The notes beneath the pieces are model-generated. The model did no database searches. It saw nothing but the letters and a program-made list of their open reading frames with translations, and was not told where the DNA came from. From contig NW_025766769.1 of NCBI RefSeq assembly GCF_003918875.1, positions 620,001 through 684,000 of the forward strand: DNA of 64,000 nucleotides, given 5' to 3'. This document shows, piece after piece, positions 14,986-44,811 of the stretch. Each line of letters begins with the position of its first letter. Positions within the stretch are counted from its first letter, which is position 1. A program made the translations under genes and the position numbers. Origin of the DNA: Haliotis rubra. Taxonomy: Eukaryota.

Positions 14986-15854
14986 AATGACTTGTTCATT
15001 ATCTCTCAACACCGATGGTTTGACTTCTTACCTCGAGACTTAATACGAGACATGCACAATTTATCTTGACATGTATTTTTGACGTTCATAAAACCTTCCC
15101 ATGATCACAGGAAAGCAGTTCACTTTACTTTACCGACTGCAACAATAACATATACCACATGTATATGTGTTATGTATGCAAGCCTCGGATATTTGTAACT
15201 TTATCAACTCGTGTTGGTACGTCTCCAACAATGGAACATTCTTGTTCATACACCTCCGGTGTATTCCTCTGGTACCTATGACCCAACACTGCCGCTGTTA
15301 CAGGTCATTGGCTCCCTCCCTCTGCAAGCATTCTGCGTTCTGCTGTTTATTTTGTTGACAGTTACATAGACAGATTCTTTAATACAAATGCATAAAATCG
15401 GTGATTTACAATGTGATTAGGTTGTCTGACAAAACATCCACTTGCACAGTTTGAGATCGACTGGGTCATTGGATGAAGAGATATTTACAAAAAAACCGGG
15501 TCCACATGCATTTCATGCCAAACTATAGAGTTGGGGGACCATCAAGGTGTATTCAGTGTACTCATCTCTGCGCATACCAACCATAATGGGGATACCTTCC
15601 TCATGATCATCATGTCGAGATTTTACGTGCGCTTTCCGCCATAATGTGTGGGGTTTGTGATTGGGTATTGCCTGTAGGGCTGTGGTGGAGTTTGTGACTG
15701 GTTATTGCCTTTCGAGCTGCGGTTGGGGTTGTGCTCCGTAAGTATAGGTGTGTACCTTCTTTTCTTTTTCTCTTTTTAAACCCAAATCCCAGTTTGTTAG
15801 CCGACTGGGCCGCGGTAAGTGCGGTGGACGACGCGGTTGAGACAAGAGAAAGGT

Positions 15855-16185
15855 GGGGTGGTTGCCAGGATCTATAGCGGGTGATACGTTTGGCTTTACG
15901 TTGTTAGGTGGTGGTTGCCAGGATCTGTAGCGGGTGATACGTTTGGCTTTGCGTTGTTTGATGGTGGTTGCCAGGATCTGTAGCTGGTGATACGTTTGGC
16001 TTTACGTTGTTGGGTGGTGGTTGCCAGGATCTGTAGCGGGTGACGTGTTTGGCTTTACGTTGTTGGGTGGTGGTTGCCAGGATCTGTAGCGGGTGATGCG
16101 TTTGGCTTTACGTTGTTGGGTGGTGGTTGCCAGGATCTGTAGCGGGTGATGCGTTTGGCTTTACGTTGTTGGGTGGTGGTTGCCT
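15855..16185. repeat. 53-bp minisatellite
   Basis: About 6 units of GGTGGTTGCCAGGATCTGTAGCGGGTGATACGTTTGGCTTTACGTTGTT. Confidence 0.93.
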
Positions 16186-16399
16186 CTGTGGGTGTGGTGT
16201 TGGGGTTTCGGTACGTGGCCATAATTGTCAGGGATATTGTCCCGGGTTCTAAAGGATTCGGTGTAGCTTTCCATGGGTGGAAGATCATCGTTGTGATGGT
16301 GGGATTACGAGGATATCTTGTAGGGTGGAGTGGGTGTTTGCCAGTGTTGTGCATAACAAGGGTGAACTTTACAGGAGTAGGAAGTGGAGTTGTTAAAGG

Positions 16400-16602
16400 A
16401 GGGGATATGTGGGCTGTTAAGTCTGTAGTATAGGGATTACTGGGCTGTTTAAGTCTGTAGTATAGGGATTAGTGGGCTGTTTAAGTATGTAGTATAAGGA
16501 TTAGAGGGTTGTTTAGGGAAATTGAAAGTGTATTGGTAAATACTACCGCTTACTGGCTCTCAGGATTAGAGGGTTGTCTAAGTCTGTACTATAGGGATTA
16601 GA
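16400..16602. repeat. 32-bp repeat, upstream outlier of the 17325-19040 array
   Basis: Same unit: GGGTTGTTTAAGTCTGTAGTATAGGGATTA. Confidence 0.85.
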
Positions 16603-16709
16603 CTACCTCACTTAGCATGGCCCATATGTTCAGTGCTGGGAGCAGACAGGTGATGTCCCAGGCAATATCTGGACCTATCTGGCCACAATACGACTTCACT
16701 GTGGGCGCC

Positions 16710-19700
16710 ATGTTGTTACTGGTGTGTCTCTCGGCCTGTGTCGCCTTGGCTGCAGGTAGTCATTTCTTGTAGTCATTTCTTGTAGTGCATTAATGACTGG
16801 ACGGGTGGCTGGGTTGTGGACAGGTGGCGGGGGCTGGCAGGTGTAGCAGCGATTGATAATATATTTATATAGATAACAGGTAAAGTAAAGTTGCTTGATT
16901 CCCACTCATGAATGTGCTAATATCTTCATTCTCATAACCACAAGCTTCTTCCACCGTTTATCACACATCGCACAGCTGGAATATTGCAGAGTGCAACGTA
17001 TAGCTCTGAACTCCCAAGCCTCCTACTCTAACCCAACCCGCCCACAACCTGCACCTTACACGCCCACTACCCCAGCCCGCCCACAACCTGCACCTTACAC
17101 GCCACACCCACTACCCCAGCCCACCAACAACCTGCACCTTACACGCAACACCCACTACCCCAGCCCACCAACAACCTGCACCTTACACGCCCACTACACC
17201 AGCCCACTCACAACCTACATCTTACACGCCTACTACCCCAGCCCACCAACAACCTGCTCCTTACACGCCCACTATCCAAACCCACCCACAACCTAAGCCT
17301 TACACGCCCACTACCCCAGCCCCGAGGGTTGTTCAATTCTGTAGTATAGGGATTATAGGGTTGTTTAAATCTGTAGTATAGGGATTAGAGGGTTGTCTAA
17401 GTCTGTAATATAGGGATAAGAGGGTTGTCTAAGTCTGTAATAAAGGGATTAGAAGGTTGTTTAAGTCTGTAGTATAAGGATTAGAGGGTTGTCTAAGCCT
17501 GTAATATAGGGATTAGAGGTTAGTTTAAGTCTGTAGTATAAGGATTAGAGGGTTGTCTAAGTCCGTAGTAAGGGGATTAGAGGGATCTTTAAGTCTGTAG
17601 TATAGGGATGAGAGGGTTGTTTAAGTCTATAGTATAGAGATTAGAGGGTTGTCTAAGTCTGTAATATAGGGATTACAGGGTTGTGTAAGTCCGTAGTATA
17701 GGGATTAGTGGGGTTTTAAGTCTGTACTATAGGGATTAGAGGGTTGTCTAAGTCTATAGTATAGAGATTAGAGGGTTGTCTAAGTCTGTAATACAGGGAT
17801 TAGAGGGTTGTCTAAGTCTGTAGTATAGGGGTAAGTGGGGTTTCAAGTCTGTAGTAAAGCGATTAGTGGGTTGTTTAATTCTGTAGTATAAGGATTAGAG
17901 AGTTGTTGAAGTCCGTAGTATACGGATTAGAGGGTTGTTGAAGTCTGTAGTATATGGATTAAAGGGTTGCCTAAGTCTGTAGTATTGGGATTAGAGGGTT
18001 GTCTAAGTCTGTAATAAAGGGATTAGAAGGTTGTCTTAGTCTGTAATATAGGGATAAGAGGGTTGTCTTAGGCTGTAATATAGGGATTAGAGGGTTGTTT
18101 AAGTCTGTAGTATAAGGATTAGAGGGTTGTCTAAGTCTGTAATATAGGGATTAGAGGGTTGTTTAAGTCTGTAATATAAGGATAAGAGGGTTGTCTAAGT
18201 CTGTAATATAGGGATTAGAGGGTTGTTTAAGTCTGTAGTATAATGATTAGGGGGTTGTCTAAGTCTGTAAAATGGGGATTAGAGGGTTGTCTAAGCCTGT
18301 AATATAGGGGTTAGAGGTTAGTTTAAGTCTGTAGCCTGTAGGGATACTGTAGTATAATGATTAGAGGGTTGTCTAAGTCTGAAGTAAAAGGATTAGAGGC
18401 TTGTCTAAGTCTGTAGTATTGGGATTAGAGGGTTGTTTAAGTTTGTAAGTCTGTAGCATAGGGATACTGTAGTATAATGATTAGAGGGTTGTCTAAGTCT
18501 GTAAAATAGGTTTAAAGGGTTGTTTAAGTCTGTAATATAGGGATAAGAGGGTTGTCTAAGTCAGTAATGTATGGATTAGAGGGTTGTTTAAGTCTGTAAT
18601 ACAGGGATTAGAGGGTTGTTTAAGTCTGTAGTATAGGGATTAGAGGGTTGTCTAAGTCAGTAATGTAGGGATTAGAGGGTTGTCTAAGTCAGTAATGTAG
18701 GGATTAGAGGGTTGTTTAAGTCTGTAGTATAATGATTAGGGGGTTGTCTAAGTCTGTAAAATGGGGATTAGAGGGTTGTCTAAGCCTGTAATATAGGGAT
18801 TAGAGGTTAGTTTAAGTCTGTAGTATTGGGATTAGAGGGTTGTTTAAGTTTGTAAGTCTGTAGTATAGGGATACTGTAGTATAATGATTAGAGGGTTTAA
18901 GTTTGTAAGTCTGTAGTATAGGGATACTGTAGTATAATGATTAGAGGGTTGTCTAAGTCTGAAGTAAAAGGATTAGAGGGTTGTCTAAGTCTGTAGTATA
19001 GGGATTAAAGGGTTGTCTAAGTCTGTAGTATAGTGATTAGAGTGATTACACCTTACACACCCGTACCCCAGCCCACCCACAAGCTGCACCTTACATACCC
19101 AGTACCCCAGCCCACCCACAACCCACATCTTATACGTCCACTACCCCAGCCCCCCACAACCCACACCTTACACGCCCACTACCCCAACCCACCCGAAACT
19201 TGCTCCTTACACGCCCACTACCCCAGCCCACCCACAACCGACACCTTAAATGACAACTACCCCAGCCCACCCACAACCTACACCTTACACGCCCACTACC
19301 CCAGCCCACCCACAACCTGCACCTTACACGCCCACTACCACAGCCCACCCACAACCTACACCTTACACGTCCACTACCCCAGCCCACCCACAACCTACAC
19401 CTTACACGCCCACTACCCCAGCCCACCCACAACCTACACCTTACACGCCCACTACCCCCAGCCCACCCGCAACTTGCTCCTTACACGCCCACTACCCCAG
19501 CCCACCCACAACCCACACCTTACACGCCCACTACCCCAGCCCACCCACAACCCACACCTTACACGCCCACTACCCCAGCCCACCCACAACCCACACCTAC
19601 ACGCCCACTACCCCAGCCCACCCACAACCCACACCTTAAATGTCAACTACCCCAGCCCACCCACAACCCACACGTTAAACGCCCACTACCCCAGCCCACC

Positions 19701-22700
19701 CACAACCTGCACCTTACATGTCCACTACCCCAGCCAACCCACAACCTACACCTTACACACTCACTACCCCAGCCCACCCACAACCTACACCTTACACGCC
19801 CACTACCCCAGCCCACCCACAACCTACACCTTACACGCCCACTACCCCAGCCCACCCATAACCTGCACCTTACACGCCCACTACTCCAGCCCACCCACAA
19901 CCTACACCTTACACGCCCACTACCCCAGCCCATCTACAACCTGCACCTGACATGTCCACTACCCCAGCCCCCGTGTACTCACTAACAACACAGGTACGTA
20001 CACACCTGTACATGTACTCACTAACAACACAGGTACGTACACACTTGTACATGTACTCACTAACAACCCAGGTACGTACACATCTGTACATGTACACACT
20101 ATCAACACAGGTACGTACACACTTGTACATGTACTCACTAACAACCCAGGTACGTACACATCTGTACATGTACACACTATCAACACAGGTACGTACACAC
20201 TTGTACATGTACTCACTAACAACCCAGGTACGTACACATCTGTACATGTACACACTATCAACACAGGTACGTACACACTTGTACATGTACTCACTAACAA
20301 CCCAGGTACGTACACATCTGTACATGTACACACTATCAACACAGGTACGTACACATCTGTACATGTACACACTATCAACCCAGGTACGTACACACTTGTA
20401 CATGTACTCACTAACAACCCAGGTACGTACACATCTGTACATGTACACACTATCAACACAGGTACTTACACACCTGTACATGTACACACTATCAACACAG
20501 GTACGCACACACTTGTACATGTACTCACTAATAGCACAGGAACGTACACACCTGTACATGTGTCACAGGGTTTTATAACACGATCTCTGGGTTGGTGTTC
20601 AACCTGCACCTGACATGTCCACTACCCCAGCCCCCGTGTACTCACTAACAACACAGGTACGTACACACCTGTACATGTACTCACTAACAGCACAGGTACG
20701 TACACACCTGTACATGTACACACTAACAACACAGGTACTTACACACTTGTACATGTACTCACTAACTACACATGTATGTACTTATACAGAAGCACTGTCT
20801 AACATTGGAAAGTTGAAGGGGGCCGGGGGGCGGCCTAGACTGTCCCGGTGTTAGGAATATTTTGTTGTGATGTACCAAGTAAGACGCCATCTCATTTGAA
20901 GGGGGAGGCGCTCTAGACTGTCCCGGTGATAGTATAATTCTGTTGTGATGTACCAAGTAAGACGCCATCTCATTTGAAGGGGGAGGCGCTCTAGACTGTC
21001 CCGGGGGTCACCGGTACTCTGCACGTGGCACGGCCTACTACCCCGCCGACAACCCGCTTGAGGGAGGCTTTGTGGACATGAGGGGCGCTAGACTCAGGAC
21101 GCTACAGGTAAGTAATCTGAGGATATAAAATGTTTGTTGGGGTTTCACCATAACATTAAAAACAACTCTTCCAAACTCTCAGATGACCTGCGTGAAATGC
21201 GTCTAACCACGTGATCCGTCTCCATGGCAGAAGATTCAGACGTTGGCTTGGATGTTCATGAGTCAGAGCTGGACATCTGAAATTTACTGATGTCAGGGTG
21301 ACGGTAGCCAAGTTGACGCCCGATGACCCCGAATAACATGCCAGATGCATGCATACCGACTACTAGTATCTGCTATAATCTCAGTTCCATTGGAAGTTTT
21401 CTCCTCTCCATGTTAACGTGTATAGATGAAACAGATATTCACAAGTTTTATACTCTTGAACGGTCAGGCAGAGATGCTTCTTTACATGATATGAGTGGCC
21501 ATAATGCTTCATATGCATATGGTCTGCGTTTTGGCGAACCCTTGCAAACCGAAACCTTGTTGTTCATTAACTGAAATATGCTACTAAACAAAGGCAACAT
21601 TAACATATCATCATCGTCGATAGCTACATCGCTATGATGAAATATTAGGGGGTGCTTAATTAAGTTCCATGTGTATATGATGAGGTCTATAGACACACTG
21701 AACTTGGTATGATAACATACAACTACTGACCTTATCATTATGTGACCTGTCCTGGACCCTGTTTCACAAAGCTCTCGTAAGCCTAAGATCTCGTAACTTT
21801 TCTCGTAGTATTCGTACCTCCTATACTGTAACATAGGGACTACGAATGCTATGAGAAAAGTTACGAGATTTTAGGCTTACGAGAGCTTTGTGAAACGGGG
21901 CCCTGGCACGACTATACTGACGTGTCCAATAGTGCAACAGGATACAGACATCGAACCTGGAGAACTGGCAACGCGTTTGGTTCAGCGATGAATCGCTTGG
22001 ATGAGACAACGTGTCTATTGACCTGGACACGAACGTTTTGCGCCGAACAGCGTTCGACAGGTGGACAGATTTGGCGGAGTGGGCGTCATGGTGTGGGGAG
22101 CCATGTCCTACACTGGTAGATCAGAGCTAGCGGTGGTTGAAGGCGATCTTACGGCAAATCGCTACATCGGCCAAATCCTGCGATCTCACCTCCTCCCAAT
22201 CCCATTCCCCACCAGAGGGAGCTGTTTCAGCACGACAACACTCGACCCCACACAGCTCGTGTAACAGGTGCCTATCTCGCCAGTGAAAACGTCAATGGTC
22301 TTCACTTGCCTTCCAATCCGCCTGATCTGAATCCGATCGAGCATCTATGGGACGTAAATGATCGACGCGTCCGTGAACGTCACCATCGTCATCAGACACT
22401 TGCCAACCGTTGCAGGAGGAATGGCGAAGAATTCCCCAAGCAGAAATCCGACGACTTCCAATCCCTTCCAAGGCGGTGTCCAGCAGTGACAACTGCAATG
22501 CAAGGGTGGTGTCACCGCTTACTGACCTGAACGCCCCCTTGTGTCCTCACATGTTCAGTGAGTGAACTGACTTAATGCTAACAGTGACAACAATACATAC
22601 GTTCATCCGTCTGTGTCGAATTCCGTTCATCTATGTTCAAGCTTAAAGGCCCCCTCTACACAGGACGGCGACCGCTCTGCCTTCTCTCTGCGTTCTAAAA

Positions 22701-25594
22701 ATGACCAGGACGCACAACGGTCGCCATACCTATGGTCCGGCGTCCCTTGTACCTTCCGCATACTACCTAAGATGCCATTTTTGACATTTTAGTGGCGTTC
22801 TTTGAACGTCCTAGGCGTCCTCTCTGCCTTCCCTCTGCCTTCTCTGAACCATCATATGCAAATAACGGCGTCCGTTCAGCGTTGCTTCTGCCTTCTAGCC
22901 GACCGTTGTGCCTTCCTTGTGCATTCTCTGGCGTTCGCTCTGCCTTCTCTCTGCGTCATGTGGCGACTGTTTGGCAACCTGCATACTCTAGGTATATAAG
23001 TACCCGACTACGACATTTTATCATTAGTTTCATACGAGCGGGCTAAATGAAATCATCTTATAACGACTTCAGTAAGCATGAACAATGAACTGCGTTTGCA
23101 AATAACTTTTTTGCAAGGTCAACAAGCATTGTTTTTCAACCAGATAGCCATTGCCATCTTAAATAGGAGGATAAATAGACGTAGAACAAGAAGCTTGAGA
23201 ACCCTGTGGGTCCGCCCATGGTTGACGCAACACAGACGGTTGCAATACGGGGACTACAACCAACTAATGCAAGAACTGCGTCTTGAAGATGAAGGGTCAT
23301 TCTACAATTATCTGAGAATAGAGCCAGCCCCTTTTGACGAACTTCTACAACGGGTTGGCCAAGGAATCGCAAAACAGAACACAAATCGGCGAGCGAATTT
23401 AGAGCATGGTTTGAAACTTGCCGTAACCATCAGGTTCCTTACAACTGGGGACAAATACCCAAGCCTCCAGTACCAGTATCGTGTGTCACGCAGTACGATC
23501 TCCATTTTTGTGCCTGAAGTTTGCAGAGCTATCCGAGATGAATATAAGAATGAAGCTCTCAAATGCCCAAGGAACTCCCAAGAGTGGAAAGCTGTTGTAG
23601 ATGACTTTCAGAGACGTTGGAACTTACCCCATGCATGTGGAGCCATTGATGGGAAACATATAGCCGTGCGTTGTCCACCAAACACAGGCAGTCTCTACCA
23701 CAACTATAAGGGATACTTCTCTCTTGTCCTTCTTGCATTAGTGGATGCAAATTATACATCTTTATGGTGTGATGTTGGTGTGTTGGAACGATGTCAGACA
23801 GTTAGATTTTCAATGAATCTGAAGTTCAGATTCTGAACTGAAGACCAGCCTCGAAGATGGCACAATAAACTTTCCAACTCCTGATCCATTGCCGAATGAT
23901 GACCGTGACATACCATTCTTCCTACTCGGGGATGATGTATTTGCCCTCAGAACCCACATGATGAAGCCATATTCAATAAGGGCACTCACCAAGGGGCAAC
24001 GGATCTTCAACTATTGTATTTGAAGTGTTGTGTATGGAACTGAATGGAATTGTTTGATGATGTTCATATATTTACTCTTTATTAGTCTTATGAGCTCGTT
24101 ATGGATATCTAGATTTCAAAATAAGATATCAATGTGTGTATATTGTTTGTTCTCAAATACCGTGGAAATCGGCAGTGCAAGACCTATTTATATGTAATCT
24201 GGAAAGGCAGAGTAAAGGCAGAGCGAACGCTGCGGTTGTTCAAAGGGATGCGCTAGTCGCTGAATGAAGGCAGAGTGAATGCTCAATGAACGCCAATGGA
24301 TGCTCGACAGACGCACAATGAAGGCAGAGAGAAGGCAGGGACAACGTGGCAGTTTACAAGGGTTTTATGTGGCGTCCTTTCGCCAACCGTTGTGCCTTCA
24401 CTCTGTGACCTCTGTCTTCCCTCTGTGACCTCTGTCTTCCGTCTGCGTCCTGTGATCAATCAACAATGACGGTGACCGCTCTGCGTTTGTTTAGAGCATG
24501 TTCAATCCAGTCGCCACTGCAGTGCCGTTCTGAGCCGTTCTTGGCATTGGCTCTGCCTTCTTTCTGCCTTCATGGCGATGGCTCTCTGCCTTCTCTCTGC
24601 GTTCCTCGTGCCTCCTTTGAGCGTCCAGTGGCGTTCTGAAAATTGTTAGAACGCAGAGGGAAGGCAGAGCGGTCGCCGTCCTGTGTAACGGGGGCCTTAA
24701 TTTACTTATGTACACTTAAATACGTTCAATACATTTCCATATTTCTGGCCTGTGCGTTTCTTTTTTATTAAAATGTTTAATATGATAAGGTCACTAAACA
24801 GCCTGAACATGGTATGGTAAGAGTCATGGTTTGGTAAGTGCAAGGACAATCTCAGTGAGATTTTCAAGCGTCTGCTGTTTTTTTTTTTTTATTTCAGCAA
24901 TTTCTTGCTGGTAGTGCGAGCTATGTGAGTGTTGCCATGGACAACCACGCCGGCATTGCCTACGGCACCAGCATCTGTATCCCCGAGATGAACCAGCGAT
25001 ACAACAAACACATTGTCTTTAAGGTGGGTCAGGTAACTTCGATCACCTGTATTACAGGTGTGGTAGACATCGTCACAGATAGCAATGTACACCAGTAGAT
25101 GAATCACAGATACAACAAGCACATTGTCTTTAAGGTGGGTCAGGTAACTTCGATCACCTGTATTACAGGTGTGGTAGACGCCGTCACAGATAGCAATGTA
25201 CACCAGCAGATGAATCACAGATACAACAAGCACATTGTCTTTAAGGTGGGTCAGGTAACTTCGATCACCTGTATTACAGGTGTGGTAGACACCGTCATAG
25301 ATAGCAATGTGTGTGTATACTATTTTCACATATGGATATCTAATAGCCTCCATCCCCGCATAATTATACAGTAACGACCCTAAGCGTCGCACATTTAGGG
25401 CTGCTAAATCCTTGTGTGATACTCATATATGACGTGGCAATGTTTAGCTGTGAATTGTTCTTTCTCCGAAGGTAGTAGACACGGGGTCAGCGTTCTTTGG
25501 TAAAGGTCACAGCCGTATTGACATCTGCGTCAGCTCCCAGGCCAACTCGTACGACTCCACAATCAACGGCCATCTCACCCTTGTCTTTCCTTGA
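16710..25594 (+). CDS. Secreted 3D-domain (MltA-like three-Asp, putative peptidoglycan lytic transglycosylase) protein, copy 1, 140 aa; join(16710-16755,20980-21107,24898-25023,25472-25594)
   Basis: GCCATG start and signal peptide MLLLVCLSACVALAA; GT-AG introns with phases 1,0,0; motifs GTAYYP, VAMD, YGT.I.IP, VVDTGSAF, RIDIC; AATAAA at about 25626; exons 2-4 almost identical to copy 2. Exon 1 assignment is less certain than exons 2-4. Confidence 0.8.
17030..17324. repeat. 39-bp C-rich minisatellite, left block
   Basis: CACCCACAACCTACACCTTACACGCCCACTACCCCAGCC units. Confidence 0.9.
17325..19040. repeat. 32-bp minisatellite (GAGGGTTGTCTAAGTCTGTAGTATAGGGATTA)
   Basis: About 50 diverged tandem units. 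Confidence 0.95.
19045..19972. repeat. 39-bp C-rich minisatellite, right block
   Basis: Same unit as 17030-17324; explains the HAHYPSPPTT ORF. Confidence 0.95.
19973..20770. repeat. 39-bp minisatellite (ACTAACAACACAGGTACGTACACACCTGTACATGTACTC)
   Basis: Tandem units with two alternating variants; junction 19938-20010 is re-duplicated at 20600-20672. Confidence 0.93.
21755..21902. mobile_element. Palindromic MITE with 3-bp CTG TSD
   Basis: Arms GACCCTGTTTCACAAAGCTCTCGTAAGCCTAAG... and ...CTTACGAGAGCTTTGTGAAACGGGGCC are reverse complements; CTG at 21752-21754 and 21903-21905. Confidence 0.85.
21930..22530 (+). pseudogene. Tc1/mariner DD34E transposase relic
   Basis: Frameshifted GGVGVMVWGAMSY...FQHDNTRPHTAR...PSNPPDLNPIEHLWD. 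Confidence 0.85.
22647..24697 (+). mobile_element. PIF/Harbinger DNA transposon, internally deleted, in intron 2 of 3D gene copy 1
   Basis: About 55-bp TIRs (AGGCCCC..TACACAGGACGGCGACCGCTCTGCCTTC.CTCTGCGTTCTAA); TAA TSD at 22644-22646 and 24698-24700; subterminal CTCTGCCTTC repeats; HARBI1-like ORF. Confidence 0.92.
23078..24022 (+). pseudogene. Harbinger transposase (HARBI1-like, DDE_Tnp_4), frameshifted and truncated
   Basis: KLAVTIRFLTTG, GAIDGKHI, YNYKGYFSLVLLALVDANY-like motif, frameshift near 23780-23836, then LLGDDVFALRTHMMKPY...IFNY followed by a stop. Confidence 0.9.
24987..25310. repeat. 111-bp repeat, 3 units, containing the exon end and 5' splice site of the 3D gene
   Basis: Unit = last 37 nt of the exon (GATGAACCAGCGATACAACAAACACATTGTCTTTAAG) + GTGGGT donor + intron start. 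Confidence 0.93.
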
Positions 25595-25829
25595 CCTCCA
25601 CGTGGTTGTTACGGGACGATGGAGAAATAAAAGACCCGGTCTTTCTTCTTCTACCATAATAAATAGAAACAATGCATCACTCTAAAGCGTTATTATTGAC
25701 CACCCACGTTGGTTGATCAAGCTCCCAGTCATTAAATCACGGGCAGATCATGAAACAACTTCACTTCCAATCTGAGAGACAGAAGAAGGGCGCCTTGTCC
25801 ATGGGTTGAAAGAGAACATGACAATGCAG

Positions 25830-35014: not shown

Positions 35015-38000
35015 ATGATGACTTTGGTCGCTGTTGCCGCCTTGGCAATAAATCTACATGGAGCTAGCGCTGCTCAGTGCGCATGCGCTAGAGGGAATGT
35101 TCACGTCCGGTCAGGTGCGGGGACGAGTCATGCGGTCCTCGGTACGCTGATCAGCGGAAGTTGCGTCACTTATGAAGGCGACCAGAGCAGCGGCTGGGTG
35201 CACGTGGACTATAACGGCAGGGTAGGTGGTTGACCTGGGTTACATGTGATGTGTGGACTGCCACGGCAGGGTAGGTGGTTGACCTGGGTGACATGTGATG
35301 TGTGGACTGCCACGGCAGGGTAGGTGGTTGGCCTGGGTTACATGTGATGTGTGGACTACCACGGCAGGGTAGGTGGTTGACCTGGGTTACATGTGCTGGG
35401 TGGACTACCACGGCAGGGTAGGTGGTTGACCTGGGTGACATGTGATGTGTGGACTACAACGGCAGGGTAGGTGGTTGACCTGGGTTACATGTGATAGGTG
35501 GTCTACCACGGCAGGGTAGGTGGTTGACGTGGGTTACATGTGATGGGTGGACTACCACGGCAGGGTAGGTGGTTGACCTGGGTTACATGTGCTGGGTGGA
35601 CTACCACGGCAGGGTAGGTGTTTGACCTGGGTTACATGTGCTGGGTGGTCTACCACGGCAGGGTAGGTGGTTGACCTGGGTGGTCTACCACGGCCGGGTA
35701 GGTGGTTGACCTGGGTGACATGTGCTGGGTGGACTACCACGGCAGGGTAGGTGGTTGACCTGGGTTACATGTGCTGGGTGGACTACCACGGCAGGGTAGG
35801 TGGTTGACCTGCGTGCAGGTGGACTATTGATGTTCTAGTATCATTTAATAACCATCAAATAGCCAATTCTCTAAAGGTGTTTTACTCAACTGAACTTAAA
35901 TGAGATCATTTCATGTGTGAAATCTATGTATAAATATTAAGTATTCATCTCAAAAGCAATGTCTTAAGAACTACAGCCTTCTACATCATTCTGATGTGTT
36001 GATCCATGAAGGTTCGGGTTAGAATGAACCTTCAGTAACCCATGCTTGTCGTAAGAGGCGACTAACGGGATCGGGTGGTCAGGCTCGCTGGCTTGGTTGA
36101 CACTGGTCATCGGTTCCCAATTGCGCAGATCGATGCTCATGCTGTTGATCACTGGATTTTCTGGTCCAGACTCGATTATTTACAGACCGCCGATATATAG
36201 CTGGAATATTGCTGAGTGCAGCGTAAAACTAAACTCACTCACTCATGTGTTGATCCACTACATCTGATGTGTTGATCCACTACATCTGTTATGTTGATCC
36301 ACTACATCTGATGTGTTGATCCACTACATCTGATTGTCTGGTATTTCTTACAGAGCGGGTGGATCGCGGGAAATTATGTCAACATTCAGACTTGCTCGGG
36401 GGGTTCCGTCACCTCAGGTAAACGTCGTTGTTCCAAGTCATGATTTATCCTCATTTGCCACAAACTATAACATGATGTTCATCATCATAAACTACATATA
36501 TAACATGATGTTCATCATCATAAACTACATATATAACATGATGTTCATCATCATAAACTACATATATAACATGATGTTCATCATCATAAACTACATATAT
36601 AACATGATGTTCATCATCATAAACTACATATATAACATGATGTTCATCATCATAAACTGAAACATAATGCTCGTTATCATAAACTATAACATGAAGTAAG
36701 ACGCCATCTCATTTGAAGGGGGAGGCGGCCTAGACTGTTCCGGGGGTCACCGGTACTCTGCACGTGGCACGGCCTACTACCCCGCCGACAACCCACTGGA
36801 GGGAGGCTTCGTGGACATGAGGGGCGCTAGACTCAGGACGCTACAGGTAAGCTTATTCTGACTGTCATATATGAAAGAAAAGCATCTTGTAGTGGCTCGA
36901 AGACTCTAGATTGTCACACATTGAAGGGTGTTCCTGTAGGCAAGTTCTAATATCCAAGTGCTAGTTTACCGATCGTACGTTCAGCTCACAATGGCTGGAT
37001 GTACTTGTGCCAAATGTTTACGACACCGACGTGCGTGACAGGTGCGTATAACAACGTTATTATTCTTGACATGGTTTTGTTTCTTGCTGTTTAACTAAGC
37101 TAGCCTCAAGCTACATGACTTCAAAACTGATCTATTCCTGCAGGATACAATTACATGCAGTCAATTTAGTAGCTTTTTGTAATCGGCTTGCTTGGCTCCA
37201 ACCCGGACCCCACTGGTGCTTGACACGAAGACGAGTGGGTGTATACACCCCAAGATCACTGCTGGCAGACTTGCACACCGCCATCTAGTCGTCCAGAGAC
37301 CCCGGAACACGATCTGTAAGACCACTACCCCGTCGTCCAGTGCACTGGAACACGATCTGTATGACCACTACCTCGTCGTCCAGTGCACTGGAACACGATC
37401 TGTATGACCACTACCTCGTCGTCCAGTGCACTGGAACACATTCTGTGTGACCACTACCCCGTTGTCCAGTCAACCGGAACACGATCTGTATGACCACATA
37501 TCTGTTAGATTGAATATATTATTTTCAAACGATTGTTTTATTCCAGCAATTTCTTGCTGGAAGTGCGAGCTATGTGAGTGTTGCCATGGACAACCACGCC
37601 GGCATTGCCTACGGCACCAGCATCTGTATCCCCGAGATGAACCAGCGATACAACAAACACATTGTCTTTAAGGTGGGTCAGGTAACTTCGATCACCTGTA
37701 TTAAAAGTGTGGTAGACACCGTCACAGATAGCAATGTACACCAGTAGATGAATCAGCGATACAACAAACGCATTGTCTTTAAGGTGGGTCAGGTAACTTC
37801 GATCACCTGTATTACAGGTGTGGTAGACACCGTCACAGATAGCAATGTACACCAGTAGATGAACCAGCGATACAACAAACACATTGTCTTTAAGGTGGGT
37901 CAGGTAACTTCGATCACCTGTATTACAGGTGTGGTAGACACCGTCAAAGATAGCAATGTACACCAGTAGATGAATCAGCGATACAACAAACACAGTGACT

Positions 38001-41000
38001 TTAAGGTGGGTCAGGTAACTTCGATCACCTGTATTACAGGTGTGGTAGACACCGTCACAGATAGCAATGTACACCAGTAGATGAATCAGCGATACAACAA
38101 ACACAGTGACTTTAAGGTGGGTCAGGTAACTTCGATCACCTGTATTACAGGTGTGGTAGAGACCGTCACAGATAGCAATGTACACCAGTAGATGAATCAC
38201 AGATACAACAAACACAGTGACTTTAAGGTGGGTCAGGTAACTTCGATCACCTGTATTACAGGTGTGGTAGAGACCGTCACAGATAGCAAAGTACACCAGT
38301 AGATGAATCAGCGATACAACAAACACATTGACTTTAAGGTGGGTCAGGTAACTTCGATCACCTGTATTACAGGTGTGGTAGAGACCGTCACAGATAGCAA
38401 TGTACACCAGTAGATGAATCAGCGATACAACAAACACATTGACTTTAAGGTGGGTCAGGTAACTTCGATCACCTGTATTACAGGTGTGGTAGAGACCGTC
38501 ACAGATAGCAATGTACACCAGTAGATGAATCACAGATACAACAAACACAGTGACTTTAAGGTGGGTCAGGTAACTTCGATCACCTGTATTACAGGTGTGG
38601 TAGAGACCGTCACAGATAGCAATGTACACCAGTAGATGAATCAGCGATACAACAAACACATTGTCTTTAAGGTGGGTCAGGTAACTTCGATCACCTGTAT
38701 TACAGGTGGGGTCAGGTAACTTCGATCACCTGTATTACAGGTGTGGTGGTAGACCGTCACATGATCAGCGATACAACAATGTACACCCCGTAGTAGATGA
38801 ATCACCTGTATTACAGGTGTGCGATACAACAAACACACATTGACTTTAAGGTGGGTCAGGTAACTTCGATCACCTGTATTACAGGTGTGTAGACACCGTC
38901 ACAAACAGATAGCAATGTACACCAGTAGATGAATCACAGATACAACAAACACATTGACTTTAAGGTGGGTCAGGTAACTTCGATCACCTGTATTACAGGT
39001 GTGGTAGAGACCGTCACAGATAGCAATGTACACCAGTAGATGAATCAGCGATACAACAAACACATTGACTTTAAGGTGGGTCAGGTAACTTCGATCACCT
39101 GTATTACAGGTGTGGTAGAGACCGTCACAGATAGCAATGTACACCAGTAGATGAATCACAGATACAACAAACACAGTGACTTTAAGGTGGGTCAGGTAAC
39201 TTCGATCACCTGTATTACAGGTGTGGTAGAGACCGTCACAGATAGCAATGTACACCAGTAGATGAATCAGCGATACAACAAACACATTGACTTTAAGGTG
39301 GGTCAGGTAACTTCGATCACCCGTATTAAAGGTGTGGTGGACACCGTCACAGATAGCAATGTACACCAGTAGATGAATCACAGATACAACAAACACAGTG
39401 ACTTTAAGGTGGGTCAGGTAACTTCGATCACCTGTATTACAGGTGTGGTAGAGACCGTCACAGATAGCAATGTACACCAGTAGATGAATCAGCGATACAA
39501 CAAACACATTGTCTTTAAGGTGGGTCAGGTAACTTCGATCACCTGTATTACAGGTGTGGTAGAGACCGTCACAGATAGCAATGTACACCAGTAGATGAAT
39601 CACAGATACAACAAACACAGTGACTTTAAGGTGGGTCAGGTAACTTCGATCACCTGTATTACAGGTGTGGTAGAGACCGTCACAGATAGCAATGTACACC
39701 AGTAGATGAATCAGCGATACAACAAACACAGTGACTTTAAGGTGGGTCAGGTAACTTCGATCACCTGTATTACAGGTGTGGTAGAGACCGTCACAGATAG
39801 CAATGTACACCAGTAGATGAATCAGCGATACAACAAACACAGTGACTTTAAGGTGGGTCAGGTAACTTCGATCACCTGTATTACAGGTGTGGTAGACACC
39901 GTCACAGATAGCAAAGTACACCAGTAGATGAATCAGCGATACAACAAACACATTGACTTTAAGGTGGGTCAGGTAACTTCGATCACCTGTATTACAGGTG
40001 TGGTAGACACCGTCACAGATAGCAATGTACACCAGTAGATGAATCACAGATACAACAAGTACATTGTCTTTAAGGTGGGTCAGGTAACTTCGATCACCTG
40101 TATTACAGGTGTGGTAGAGACCGTCACAGATAGCAATGTACACCAGTAGATGAATCACAGATACAACAAACACAGTGACTTTAAGGTGGGTCAGGTAACT
40201 TCGATCACCTGTATTACAGGTGTGGTAGAGACCGTCACAGATAGCAATGTACACCAGTAGATGAATCAGCGATACAACAAACACATTGACTTTAAGGTGG
40301 GTCAGGTAACTTCGATCACCTGTATTACAGGTGTGGTAGAGACCGTCACAGATAGCAATGTACACCAGTAGATGAATCACAGATACAACAAACACAGTGA
40401 CTTTACAGGTGGGTCAGGTAACTTCGATCACCCGTATTACAGGTGTGGTGGAGGTAACTTCGACCGTCACAGATAGCAATGTACACCAGTAGATGAATCA
40501 GCGATACAACAAACACATTGACTTTAAGGTGGGTCAGGTAACTTCGATCACCTGTATTACAGGTGTGGTAGAGACCGTCACAGATAGCAATGTACACCAG
40601 TAGATGAATCAGCGATACAACAAACACATTGACTTTAAGGTGGGTCAGGTAACTTCGATCACCTGTATTACAGGTGTGGTAGACGCCGTCACAGATAGCA
40701 ATGTACATATACATCACCAGTCTGGAATACTAAAAACACAGGATGGAATACGATGAACAAGATTTATCATGGAACGTTCTTCTTGAACTGATTTTGCAAT
40801 TAAAAAGGCATCTTACGTACAGTCGAACCCCGTTATCTCGAAGTCATATTTGTCGAATCCCAGATCGTGTCGGCTTATAGTCAGGATATATGTAGCGACA
40901 CTGTATTGAAAACCTGTTTCCTGTGTCGAAGTACAAGTGTCTGATTATCAGTTGTCTAGAACTTATTTTACGTCCTAAAGGTTGCATTTACGTTGGAACC

Positions 41001-42508
41001 TACCCTGAAACGTCGAGCTAATAATTACTAAACTACTTCATATTGGTTTAGGATTTGTATCGAGTGTAGTGCCCTTACTGCTCCTGTGTGTTTAGCTGTG
41101 TAGCAACCACAGCTACTGTTCCTGCTCCTGTGTGTTTAGCTGTGTAGCAACCACAGCTACTGTTCCTGCTCCTGTGTGTTTAGCTGTGTAGCAACCACAG
41201 CTACTGTTCCTGCTCCTGTGTGTTTAGCTGTGTAGCAACCACAGCTACTGTTACTGCTCCTGTGTGTTTAGCTGTGTAGCAACCACAGCTACTGTTCCTG
41301 CTCCTGTGTGTTTAGCTGTGTAGCAACCACAGCTACTGTTACTGCTCCTGTGTGTTTAGGTGTGTAGCAACCACAGCTACTGTTACTGCTGCTGTGTGTT
41401 TGGCTGTGTAGCAGCCACAGCTACTGTTACTGCTCCTGTGTGTTTAGATGTGTAGCAACCACAGCTACTGTTACTGCTCCTGTGTGTTTAGATGTGTAGC
41501 AACCACAGCTACTGTTACTGCTCCTGTGTGTTTAGATGTGTAGCAACCACAGCTACTGTTACTGCTCCTGTGTGTTTAGGTGTGTAGCAACCACAGCTAC
41601 TGTTACTGCTCCTGTGTGTTTAGGTGTGTAGCAACCGCAGCTACTGTTACTGCTCCTGTGTGTTTAGGTGTGTAGCAACCGCATCTACTGTTACTGCTCC
41701 TGTGTGTTTAGCTGTGTAGCAACCACAGCCACTGTTGCTACTCCTGTGTGTTTAGCTGTGTAGCAACCACAGCTACTGTTACTGCTCCTGTGTGTTTAGC
41801 TGTGTAGCAACCGCAGCTACTGTTACTGCTCCTGTGTGTTTAGGTGTGTAGCAACCGTAGCTACTGTTACTGCTCCTGTGTGTTTAGGTGTGTAGCAACC
41901 GCAGCTACTGTTACTGCTCCTGTGTGTTTAGCTGTGTAGCAACCACAGCTACTGTTGCTACTCCTGTGTGTTTAGCTGTGTAGCAACCACAGCTACTGTT
42001 ACTGCTCCTGTGTGTTTAGGTGTGTAGCAACCGCAGCTACTGTTACTGCTCCTGTGTGTTTAGCTGTGTAGCAACCGCAGCTACTGTTGCTGCTCCTGTG
42101 TGTTTAGGTGTGTATCAACCACAGCTACTGTTACTGCTCCTGTGTGTTTAGGTGTGTATCAACCACAGCTACTGTTACTGCTCCTGTGTGTTTAGGTGTG
42201 TAGCAACCGCAGCTACTGTTACTGCTCCTGTGTGTTTAGCTGTGTAGCAACCGCAGCTACTGTTGCTGCTCCTGTGTGTTTAGCTGTGTATCAACCACAG
42301 CTACTGTTACTTCATGTTTCTATTGCTGCGCATGTCCAGGAAGTATCCATGTCTTTGTTTAGTATATTTAGGATTACTCCTGCAGGTTGTAGACACGGGG
42401 TCAGCGTTCTTTGGTAAAGGTCACAGCCGTATTGACATCTGCGTCAGTTCCCAGGCCAACTCGTACGACTCCACCATCAACGGCCATCTCACCCTTGTCT
42501 TTCCTTGA
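35015..42508 (+). CDS. Secreted SH3b + 3D-domain protein (putative peptidoglycan-binding lytic transglycosylase), copy 2, 215 aa; join(35015-35221,36354-36417,36719-36846,37547-37672,42386-42508)
   Basis: Signal peptide MMTLVAVAALAINLHGASA; SH3b signature NVHVRSGAGTSHAVLGTL...GWVHVDYNGR|SGWIAGNYV; Gly/Ser linker; 3D motifs GTAYYP/VAMD/YGT/DTG/IDI; GT-AG introns with phases 0,1,0,0 and an open frame; AATAAA at about 42558. Confidence 0.88.
35203..35826. repeat. 49-bp minisatellite containing the exon-1 end and 5' splice site
   Basis: Unit GTGGACTACCACGGCAGG|GTAGGTGGTTGACCTGGGTTACATGTGATGT, about 13 units. Confidence 0.95.
36007..36244 (+). mobile_element. SINE, 5'-truncated, with TGTCGTAAGAGGCGACTAA core (Nin-like, tentative)
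   Basis: (ACTC)n tail and 3' end shared with the other SINEs; 13-bp TSD ATGTGTTGATCCA at 35994-36006 and 36245-36257. Confidence 0.85.
36465..36690. repeat. 33-bp minisatellite filling intron 2 of 3D gene copy 2
   Basis: AACATGATGTTCATCATCATAAACTACATATAT, about 6 units. Confidence 0.93.
37290..37500. repeat. 43-bp tandem repeat in intron 3
   Basis: GGAACACGATCTGTATGACCACTACCTCGTCGTCCAGTGCACT, about 5 units. Confidence 0.9.
37636..40710. repeat. 111-bp repeat, about 27-28 units, containing the exon end and 5' splice site
   Basis: Same unit as 24987-25310; explains the 373- and 498-aa minus-strand repeat ORFs. Confidence 0.96.
41075..42310. repeat. 44-bp minisatellite in intron 4
   Basis: TGTGTTTAGCTGTGTAGCAACCACAGCTACTGTTACTGCTCCTG, about 28 units. 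Confidence 0.96.
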
Positions 42509-44662: not shown

Positions 44663-44811
44663 NNNNNNNNNNNNNNNNNNNNNNNNNNNNNNNNNNNNNN
44701 NNNNNNNNNNNNNNNNNNNNNNNNNNNNNNNNNNNNNNNNNNNNNNNNNNNNNNNNNNNNNNNNNNNNNNNNNNNNNNNNNNNNNNNNNNNNNNNNNNNN
44801 NNNNNNNNNNN
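44663..44811. other. Assembly gap (N run)
   Basis: Run of n characters; the left flank is the 47-bp repeat that recurs at 45990-46370. Confidence 0.99.

What the first reader, a model, noticed from the sequence alone, without database searches (positions are those of the whole stretch)
16710..25594. Tandem paralogue lacking SH3b: exon-level domain shuffling gives catalytic-only and wall-targeted versions
Seen: copy 1 has the same three 3D exons (128, 126 and 123 nt) but is apparently fed by an unrelated 46-nt signal-peptide exon. It uses the same phase-1 junction at which copy 2 attaches its two SH3b exons. Inference: modular gain or loss of the binding domain at a phase-1 intron produced two effectors with identical catalytic cores but different targeting.
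Basis: partly seen in the sequence, partly recalled or inferred. Interest (0 to 1): 0.7.

Follow-up and report, generated by a model that had tools for sequence, protein, structure and literature searches.

The report
Abalone wall-cutting gene lacking its targeting module

Summary
Copy 1 is Haliotis rubra LOC124280481 (XP_046572376.1). Its exons lie at 16710-16755, 20980-21107, 24898-25023 and 25472-25594. It shares the phase-1 junction with copy 2 (LOC124280482).

- The 46-nt exon is not a stray. The H. asinina orthologue starts with the same signal peptide (15 of 16 residues).
- That orthologue, a chiton protein and a transcript from a related abalone carry an 8-cysteine module between signal peptide and core, not SH3b. 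No such exon exists in intron 1, which is 90% satellite, nor a close copy anywhere in the assembly.
- A similar 46-nt signal exon plus a phase 1-1 Cys exon heads a PGRP amidase gene on another contig.
- SH3b plus core is the ancestral layout, colinear with bacterial and bivalve homologues.
- The identical cores reflect concerted evolution. In three abalone lineages the paralogues share lineage-specific substitutions.
- The core is a YuiC/MltA-like 3D fold with three invariant Asp.

Expression of copy 1 in H. rubra and the reality of the exon loss remain unproven.

The scan had already noted copy 2 (s1-335036) and the 111-bp minisatellite (s1-335177) on this window.

The parts
16617..16709 (+). 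In-frame upstream extension of exon 1, used as the start in NCBI model XP_046572376.1 (31 extra residues). Probably 5' UTR.
   Evidence: P0002 begins here. The H. asinina orthologue P0069 begins at the downstream Met.
16710..16755 (+). Exon 1 of copy 1. It has 46 coding nt, encodes a signal peptide, ends in phase 1, and has the donor GTAGTC.
   Evidence: The NCBI model uses the same donor. It matches the N-terminus of H. asinina P0069 at 15 of 16 residues.
16756..20979 (+). Intron 1, 4224 nt, 90% tandem-repeat arrays. It holds no Cys-module or SH3b exon. It does hold non-productive copies of the acceptor plus the first 28 nt of exon 2 (78-bp repeat, 20835-21004).
20980..21107 (+). Exon 2 (128 nt, phase 1 to 0). 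It encodes a Gly-rich linker and the first part of the 3D-like core.
   Evidence: An RNA contig of run X1 covers 20978-21107 with 4 mismatches.
21108..24897 (+). Intron 2, with weak transposase-like ORFs, both below their Pfam cut-offs: DDE_Tnp_4-like (23078-23836) and DDE_3-like (22306-22530).
24898..25023 (+). Exon 3 (126 nt, phase 0 to 0). It holds the first conserved Asp motif (VAMD).
24986..25310 (+). 111-bp minisatellite made of the exon 3 end plus its donor. It has 2.9 copies here and about 27 in copy 2.
25472..25594 (+). Exon 4 (123 nt including the TGA stop). It holds the second and third conserved Asp motifs (VVDTG, RIDIC).
25626..25663 (+). Two AATAAA signals (25626-25631 and 25658-25663) in a short 3' UTR that is not homologous to copy 2's.
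   Evidence: Read. Homology to copy 2 ends 9 nt after the stop.
35015..42508 (+). Copy 2 (LOC124280482), used as the comparator. Its exons are 35015-35221 (signal peptide + SH3b), 36354-36417 (SH3b end, phase 1), 36719-36846, 37547-37672 and 42386-42508.

Best explanation
Copy 1 is a real gene (LOC124280481).

The family. Copy 1 is the H. rubra member of one of two old, neighbouring paralogue lineages of a secreted, bacterial-derived 3D-type (YuiC/MltA-like) enzyme predicted to cleave peptidoglycan.
- Lineage B (copy 2) keeps the ancestral bacterial layout of SH3b plus core.
- Lineage A (copy 1) has the same three core exons behind a different 5' cassette. That cassette is a 46-nt signal-peptide exon ending in phase 1, followed by one symmetric phase 1-1 exon for an 8-cysteine module.
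- A cassette of the same build heads a PGRP amidase gene elsewhere in this genome.

What happened in H. rubra. In the assembled haplotype the Cys-module exon is gone from an intron that is now almost entirely satellite. Because that exon is symmetric, the signal exon splices in frame to the core. The predicted product is a signal peptide plus core of about 140 aa.

Why the cores match. The core exons of the two neighbours are kept nearly identical by gene conversion confined to the exons and their immediate flanks.

Shown here: the exon structure, the orthology of the signal exon, the Cys module in relatives, its absence from the assembly, lineage-wise co-variation of the paralogues, and the fold.

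Inferred: secretion, lytic-transglycosylase activity, the order of events, and that the exon loss is biological rather than an assembly fault.
For: Gene identity and structure
- The exons and their phases match the NCBI models.
- The signal exon is 15/16 identical to the start of H. asinina P0069, whose layout is signal peptide, 52-aa 8-Cys module, core. Chiton P0080 has the same layout.

The Cys module
- In run X1 a 632-nt contig covers exon 2 and continues into exon 3 with copy 1's diagnostic base. Its 189 upstream nt end in a sequence encoding the end of the Cys module.
- No Cys exon lies in the window, and no A-type copy lies anywhere in the assembly.
- Intron 1 is 90% tandem repeats.
- On C2074 a 46-nt signal exon with a GTGAGT donor is followed by a 153-nt phase 1-1 Cys exon that is 77% identical in protein to P0069's module. 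Amidase_2 exons follow.

Concerted evolution
- Trees group rubra A with rubra B, asinina A with asinina B, and cracherodii A with cracherodii and rufescens B.
- Seven variable core sites co-vary by lineage across paralogues, against one site that follows paralogue type.
- Homology between the copies is limited to exons plus 9-25 bp flanks and the 111-bp repeat.

Constraint
- dS is 0.099, dN is 0.007 and omega is 0.07, with Fisher p = 2e-4.

Ancestral layout
- Copy 2 is colinear with a lipobox-bearing bacterial-type protein, 49% identity over 193 aa, and with a freshwater mussel protein, 51% over 215 aa.
- A cluster mate of one such protein (P0103) is named from a Polyangiaceae MAG.

Fold
- The AlphaFold2 model has pLDDT above 90 over most of the core.
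- The best Foldseek matches in the PDB are YuiC 4WLK/4WJT/4WLI at E about 1e-4, then the diffocin hub-hydrolase and MltA.
- D104, D134 and D148 are invariant in 58 sequences.
- YuiC is an active minimal MltA-type enzyme that has only a signal peptide and the core (PMC4499186).
Against: - No H. rubra transcript was seen. The four runs laid belong to a coded 'organism A', and none has a contig on 16600-16800.
- If organism A is H. rubra itself, its transcript carries a Cys exon that the assembly lacks. The core-only form would then be an assembly or haplotype artefact.
- The exon 1 donor GTAGTC is weak.
- Pfam's 3D model scores only 13-18 bits, below its cut-off of 23.8.
- Gene conversion from copy 2 could keep copy 1's core exons intact without selection on copy 1.
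- Concerted evolution rests on protein sequences of other species.
- Homology of the two 46-nt signal exons is modest: 50% of residues and 63% of bases.
Confidence: 0.6

Rival explanations
1. Assembly or haplotype artefact. Real H. rubra copy 1 still has the 8-Cys exon, so the gene encodes signal peptide, Cys module and core as in H. asinina. The exon would have been dropped when the satellite-filled intron was assembled, or it is missing in only one haplotype.
For: - Intron 1 is 90% tandem arrays, which are prone to collapse.
- A transcript from organism A joins a Cys-module end to an exon 2 only 3% different from the window and carries copy 1's diagnostic base in exon 3.
- The orthologue in H. 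asinina has the module.
Against: - No N run or gap lies in the intron.
- The 30-nt end of the transcript's Cys exon is absent from the whole 1.38-Gb assembly at up to 3 mismatches.
- Translated search finds only two diverged paralogous modules elsewhere.
- All organism A runs hold only 0.37-0.42 of the sampled words of copy 1's last exon and UTR. That fits another species better.
- The NCBI model is not flagged as low quality.
Confidence: 0.27
2. A recent tandem duplication of one gene was followed by loss (or gain) of the SH3b exons at the phase-1 intron. Copy 1 then captured an unrelated signal exon.
For: - The cores are 97% identical in DNA, and both copies use the same phase-1 junction.
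- Only two loci exist in the genome.
Against: - The signal exon is conserved in H. asinina, where it precedes a Cys module rather than SH3b.
- The A and B types coexist in H. asinina and apparently in H. cracherodii.
- Introns and the 3' UTR are unalignable although dS is only 0.1.
- Lineage-specific substitutions are shared by the paralogues.
Confidence: 0.05
3. Copy 1 is a silent relic. After it lost its module it is no longer expressed or useful, and its core exons look intact only because copy 2 keeps overwriting them.
For: - No RNA contig lies on exon 1 in four runs.
- The exon 1 donor is weak.
- The H. cracherodii A-type model also lacks 5' exons.
- Conversion is evident.
Against: - Exon 1 keeps its ATG, hydrophobic core and phase-1 donor, and is 15/16 identical to H. 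asinina.
- Eight synonymous against two non-synonymous differences have accumulated since the last homogenisation.
- Signal-peptide-plus-core proteins are the commonest layout in the family, for example in Patella, Mytilus and Haliotis rufescens type C.
- The orthologue is expressed in organism A.
Confidence: 0.08

Closest known systems
YuiC / Sps proteins of Firmicutes (Pfam 3D domain, PF06725), minimal MltA-type lytic transglycosylases (PDB 4WLK, 4WJT, 4WLI; PMC4499186)
   Same: - The core is a double-psi beta-barrel with three conserved Asp.
- YuiC is the best structural match.
- YuiC is itself a signal peptide plus core.
- The SpsE group carries SH3b domains, so the same two layouts exist in bacteria.
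   Different: - This is an animal gene with spliceosomal introns.
- Sequence identity to YuiC is about 21%.
- It scores below Pfam's cut-off.
- Activity is untested.
- The spacing between the Asp residues differs (30 and 14 residues, against 22 and 11).
SH3b-plus-core proteins of Myxococcota and Bdellovibrionota-like bacteria (P0090, P0095, P0103/P0134 Polyangiaceae MAG, P0108 Silvanigrellales, P0111 Labilithrix)
   Same: - They are 45-60% identical over the core.
- P0090 is colinear with copy 2 through SH3b, linker and core.
   Different: - They are bacterial lipoproteins with a lipobox and no introns.
- Copy 1 has no SH3b.
Horizontally acquired peptidoglycan enzymes of animals: aphid RlpA/AmiD/LdcA (PMC9116674), bivalve phage-type lysozyme (PMC5303276), GH25 lysozymes (PMC4241558), ladybird cell-wall hydrolases (PMC7807722)
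   Same: They are bacterial wall-degrading domains domesticated as intron-bearing, secreted animal genes. Aphid RlpA shares the DPBB fold class.
   Different: - The enzyme family is different (3D/YuiC-like).
- The library searched holds no paper on this family in animals.
- Here there are also tandem paralogues with swapped 5' cassettes and concerted evolution.
Mollusc PGRPs with extra N-terminal modules, such as the oyster SH3b-PGRPs MgPGRP3 and MgPGRP5 (PMC11810698)
   Same: - They follow the same logic of a wall-binding module in front of a peptidoglycan-directed domain.
- The H. rubra PGRP gene on C2074 carries the same kind of 46-nt signal exon plus 8-Cys exon as lineage A.
   Different: - The catalytic or recognition domain is Amidase_2, not 3D.
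- The 8-Cys module itself matches no Pfam family.

Membership tests
Pfam 3D domain (PF06725) / YuiC-MltA type lytic transglycosylase | Score at or above Pfam's gathering cut-off (23.8 bits) | tested here: not met
   P0002 scores 14.3 bits and P0001 13.9 bits. Relatives score 13-18 bits. Single exons give nothing.
Pfam 3D domain (PF06725) / YuiC-MltA type lytic transglycosylase | Three conserved aspartates in order (VAMD, VVDTG, RIDIC motifs) | tested here: met
   D104, D134 and D148 of P0002 are invariant in 58 animal and bacterial sequences. All three are encoded by copy 1's exons 3 and 4.
Pfam 3D domain (PF06725) / YuiC-MltA type lytic transglycosylase | The three Asp superpose on YuiC D129/D151/D162 (catalytic D162) | tested here: inconclusive
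   The fold match is clear, but no residue-level superposition was available. The equivalence is inferred from motif order and PMC4499186.
Pfam 3D domain (PF06725) / YuiC-MltA type lytic transglycosylase | Double-psi beta-barrel fold like YuiC/MltA | tested here: met
   The AF2 model has mean pLDDT 82.6 and above 90 over most of the core. Foldseek against the PDB gives YuiC at E 1.1e-4 with probability 1.00, then the diffocin hub-hydrolase, MltA, and expansin-type and designed DPBB proteins.
Pfam 3D domain (PF06725) / YuiC-MltA type lytic transglycosylase | Cleaves the glycan strand to give a 1,6-anhydro product | not testable with these tools
   This needs a biochemical assay.
SH3b (PF08239) wall-binding module | An SH3_3 match in the gene | tested here: not met
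   Copy 1 (P0002) has no SH3 hit. No SH3b-like exon lies elsewhere in the window. Copy 2 scores 45 bits.
Lineage A of the abalone pair (signal peptide + 8-Cys module + core) | The lineage's signal-peptide exon (46 nt, phase 1) | tested here: met
   15 of 16 residues are identical to H. asinina P0069. The length and phase are read.
Lineage A of the abalone pair (signal peptide + 8-Cys module + core) | The 8-Cys module exon between signal exon and core | tested here: not met
   It is absent from the window and from the assembly as an A-type copy. Whether this is biological was not testable.
Tandem paralogues under gene conversion (concerted evolution) | Paralogues group by species rather than by type | tested here: met
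   Protein trees. Seven co-varying sites against one type-specific site.
Tandem paralogues under gene conversion (concerted evolution) | Conversion tracts detected on nucleotide alignments of several species | not tested
   DNA of other abalone species could not be fetched.
Secreted protein | A cleavable N-terminal signal peptide | not testable with these tools
   No predictor is on hand. This is inferred from the 14-residue hydrophobic run ending in Ala-Ala-Gly and from homologues that start the same way.

The most novel reading that the evidence does not exclude
Abalone keep one bacterial-derived wall-cutting 'warhead' identical in neighbouring genes by gene conversion. Whole 5' cassettes (signal peptide + SH3b, or signal peptide + an 8-Cys module shared with a PGRP amidase gene) are exchanged or dropped at a single phase-1 intron. 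H. rubra would thus carry a naturally 'untargeted' core-only version next to the SH3b-targeted one. This would be an undescribed modular immune-effector system in an animal family of 3D-type enzymes.
Probability: 0.45. Interest if true: 0.65.

Novelty: new variant of a known kind. Interest (0 to 1): 0.5.

Why it matters
Both gene models already sit in the public catalogue as 'uncharacterized'. The library searched holds no paper on this animal family of 3D-type enzymes.

If the reading holds, it gives three things:
- A clear case of a bacterial wall-degrading domain, domesticated in molluscs, diversifying by swapping whole front-end cassettes at one intron, with one cassette shared with a PGRP immune gene.
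- An example of gene conversion holding the catalytic part constant while the targeting parts differ.
- A natural comparison for asking what the binding modules add. The three forms are core alone, core with SH3b, and core with the Cys module.

This is of practical interest for antibacterial enzymes in abalone aquaculture.

Tried and rejected
- Pfam 3D searched against the whole genome in six frames, and Pfam on single exons, gave nothing because the exons are too short.
- The profile search against PDB sequences gave only marginal hits. The fold search was needed.
- The word-based protein search with the signal peptide plus Cys module of P0069 found only P0069 itself.
- The ESM Atlas gave no usable identity for the Cys module. 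Weak structural neighbours include CLIP and beta-defensin-like domains at TM 0.4-0.6.
- I first read the loose end upstream of exon 2 in run X1 as SH3b-like. I rejected that once P0069 showed it is the end of the Cys module.
- I considered H. rufescens type C (P0066, LOC124152216, next to the SH3b gene) as the positional orthologue of copy 1. I rejected this because H. cracherodii has a separate A-like gene (P0128) as well as type C.
- The AU test of A-type monophyly could not run because paralogue rows are identical.
No exon maps or neighbourhoods of other abalone species were obtained.
- The joined (spliced) model was never built or searched. Exons were searched one by one by reference, and full-length analyses used the database proteins the searches returned.
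- The second Cys-like exon on C1557 showed no PGRP or 3D exon within 10 kb and was left.
Full report
**Identity of the locus**

The window is from a 1.38-Gb, 2855-contig genome. A search with the 126-nt exon, given by reference, returned two proteins with 100% matches. The source records name them XP_046572377.1 (LOC124280482, 215 aa, P0001) and XP_046572376.1 (LOC124280481, 171 aa, P0002) of Haliotis rubra.

I did not build or search a joined spliced model. Exons were searched one by one by reference. Full-length work used the database proteins that the searches returned.

**The observation**

Copy 1's core exons are these:

| Exon | Coordinates | Length | Identity to copy 2 | Copy 2 partner |
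|---|---|---|---|---|
| 2 | 20980-21107 | 128 nt | 95.3% | 36719-36846 |
| 3 | 24898-25023 | 126 nt | 99.2% | 37547-37672 |
| 4 | 25472-25594 | 123 nt with stop | 97.6% | 42386-42508 |

The identities come, and all exons have AG/GT borders.

The candidate first exon is 16710-16755. It runs from an ATG through 15 hydrophobic codons and one further base, and is followed by GTAGTC. It ends in phase 1. Copy 2's exons 35015-35221 and 36354-36417 (207 + 64 nt) also end in phase 1.

Every exon's translation sits at the expected offset in P0002 or P0001.

No SH3b-like exon is detectable elsewhere in the window. SH3_3 is called for copy 2 only. The genome holds only these two loci for the core.

Homology between the copies is confined to the exons, 9-25 bp of flank, and the 111-bp minisatellite that starts inside exon 3. 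The introns and the 3' UTR do not align.

**Is the 46-nt exon real?**

The strongest evidence is comparative. H. asinina XP_067651089.1 (P0069, 192 aa) begins with a signal peptide identical to copy 1's exon 1 at 15 of 16 residues, starting at the Met that corresponds to 16710. The exon is therefore conserved between distant abalone species, and 16710 is the conserved start.

No H. rubra RNA could be examined directly.
- The run search returned only runs of a coded 'organism A'. These hold 0.37-0.42 of the sampled words of copy 1's last exon and UTR. Runs of 'organism B' hold 0.10.
- On window 15250-21249, four organism A runs gave no contig over exon 1.
- Run X1 gave a 632-nt contig (depth 35) on 20978-21107 with four mismatches. 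It continues into exon 3 with copy 1's diagnostic T.
- That contig is preceded by 189 nt that lie nowhere in the stretch.

**What relatives carry at the junction**

P0069 has a 52-residue module with eight cysteines between the signal peptide and the core. A chiton protein (P0080, Liolophura) has the same layout.

The last 30 nt of the X1 loose end encode the end of that module. It differs by one residue from P0069 and is followed by the split Gly. The expressed orthologue in organism A is therefore signal peptide, Cys module and core. The length fits: 189 nt equals 159 nt of module plus 30 nt of signal exon.

In H. rubra nothing of this module is found.
- Translated and low-stringency nucleotide searches find nothing in the window.
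- The 30-mer is absent from the whole assembly at up to 3 mismatches.
- Intron 1 (16756-20979) is 90% tandem-repeat arrays.

A genome-wide translated search with P0069 did find the module on other contigs.
- The exon at C2074:190121-190273 (minus strand) is 77% identical in protein to P0069's module.
- It is a single 153-nt exon with a phase-1 acceptor and a phase-1 GTAAGG donor.
- About 1.8 kb upstream lies a first exon of exactly 46 coding nt. It runs from an ATG through 15 hydrophobic codons and one base, with a GTGAGT donor. It matches the lineage-A signal peptide (P0069's N-terminus, the tblastn query) at 8 of 16 residues, and I counted 63% of bases identical to copy 1's exon 1.
- About 0.9 kb downstream lie PGRP-type exons. 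The last ORF scores Amidase_2 at 32 bits, above the cut-off of 26.

So the 'unrelated' signal exon of copy 1 belongs to a two-exon 5' cassette that also heads a PGRP gene. Because the Cys exon is symmetric (phase 1-1), its loss or skipping leaves the signal exon in frame with the core. That is exactly what the H. rubra model shows.

**Why the cores are identical**

The two H. rubra copies differ at 10 of 377 shared bases. Three of these lie in the first 21 nt of exon 2 and change two residues. The other seven are synonymous. Nei-Gojobori counts give dS 0.099, dN 0.007 and omega 0.07, with Fisher p = 2e-4.

With dS near 0.1, the introns of a recent duplicate should still align. They do not.

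Protein trees of the core put the copies together by species or lineage:
- rubra A with rubra B;
- asinina A with asinina B (100/88 support for the four);
- the A-like H. cracherodii protein P0128 with cracherodii and rufescens B.

Seven variable sites co-vary by lineage in both paralogues. Two of them have three states, each shared within a lineage. Only one site, the Pro after LDC, follows paralogue type.

The A-type signal exon and the B-type SH3b exons are each shared between species, so the paralogues predate the species. The cores have therefore been homogenised repeatedly. This is gene conversion restricted to the only segments still similar enough, the exons.

**Direction of change**

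Copy 2 is colinear through SH3b, linker and core with two proteins:
- P0090, a lipobox-bearing bacterial-type protein, at 49% identity over 193 aa;
- P0074, a freshwater mussel protein, at 51% over 215 aa including the signal peptide.

Related bacterial entries are named from Polyangiaceae, Labilithrix and Silvanigrellales MAGs.

In the 58-sequence tree the animal proteins form one clade (95/93). It contains molluscs, a millipede and unnamed metagenomic sequences (P0014, P0020). It sits among bacterial and metagenomic sequences.

SH3b plus core is thus the ancestral layout. Lineage A replaced the 5' half, and other members carry only a signal peptide or a different 6-Cys module, as in Pomacea and Littorina.

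**What the core is**

- Pfam's 3D model scores only 13-18 bits on the full proteins, below its cut-off of 23.8.
- The alignment has three invariant Asp, at positions 104, 134 and 148 of P0002.
- An AlphaFold2 model has pLDDT above 90 over most of the core.
- Foldseek's best PDB matches are B. subtilis YuiC (4WLK, 4WJT, 4WLI; E about 1e-4, probability 1.0). The diffocin hub-hydrolase, a cyanophage baseplate protein, MltA and other DPBB proteins follow.

YuiC is a minimal, catalytically active MltA-type enzyme that forms a 1,6-anhydro product. It consists of a signal peptide plus the core, and a sister group carries SH3b domains (PMC4499186). A core-only animal protein is therefore plausible as an enzyme. 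This is inference.

**Most likely working**

Both genes encode secreted enzymes that cut the glycan strands of peptidoglycan.
- Copy 2 is tethered to the wall by SH3b.
- The A lineage uses an 8-Cys module of unknown specificity that it shares with a PGRP.
- The assembled H. rubra copy 1 would act untethered.

The main uncertainty is whether the missing exon is biological. I put this at about 0.6-0.65. Against it stands the possibility that organism A is H. rubra itself, in which case the assembly would lack the exon. I regard the relic reading as less likely, because of exon 1's conservation and the synonymous bias.

**Literature**

The held library has no paper on this family in animals. Known parallels are:
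- aphid RlpA, AmiD and LdcA;
- bivalve phage-type lysozyme;
- GH25 transfers;
- oyster SH3b-PGRPs.

**Limits**

Exon maps and gene order in other abalones are therefore unknown, and concerted evolution rests on proteins.

Noticed in passing
G000:C2074:189000-192141 (loci L013, L016, L018), minus strand: A PGRP (Amidase_2) gene whose first two exons are a 46-nt signal exon and a 153-nt phase 1-1 exon. The second exon encodes an 8-Cys module 77% identical to the module of the H. asinina orthologue of copy 1. The module matches no Pfam family.
   Followed up: partly
G000:C1557:1847002-1847184 (L015), minus strand: A second, more diverged exon (38% identity) for the same kind of Cys module. No PGRP or 3D exon lies within 10 kb downstream, so its partner domain is unknown.
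   Followed up: partly
window 20835-21004 and 35204-35815: Two more minisatellites built from exon edges. A 78-bp unit copies the acceptor plus the first 28 nt of copy 1's exon 2; the decoy acceptor would run into a stop. A 49-bp unit copies the end of copy 2's exon 1 plus its donor, about 10 or more copies. With the 111-bp array, three exon borders of this gene pair have seeded tandem arrays.
   Followed up: partly
window 16567-16598 and 17324-18854: One unit of the 32-bp satellite that fills much of intron 1 also lies just upstream of the 16617 ATG. Exon 1 therefore sits between copies of the same repeat family.
   Followed up: no
window 22306-22530 and 23078-23836: Weak transposase-like ORFs in intron 2 of copy 1, both below their Pfam cut-offs (DDE_3 at 19.6 bits, DDE_Tnp_4 at 21.6 bits). 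The same intron in copy 2 is only 700 bp.
   Followed up: partly
proteins P0065/P0066 (H. cracherodii, H. rufescens LOC124152216): A third, divergent paralogue type (signal peptide plus core, 136 aa, 68% identical) exists in North Pacific abalone, next to their SH3b gene by locus number. No counterpart was found in the H. rubra assembly.
   Followed up: partly
proteins P0012/P0067 (millipede Chamberlinius hualienensis) and P0096 (Phaeothamnion record): Family members occur outside molluscs. Two neighbouring millipede genes end in a Cys-rich tail. One partial record comes from an alga sample and groups with bacterial sequences. Origin and possible contamination were not examined.
   Followed up: no
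window 44663-44811: The only N run of the window (149 N). It lies downstream of copy 2 and was left untouched.
   Followed up: no
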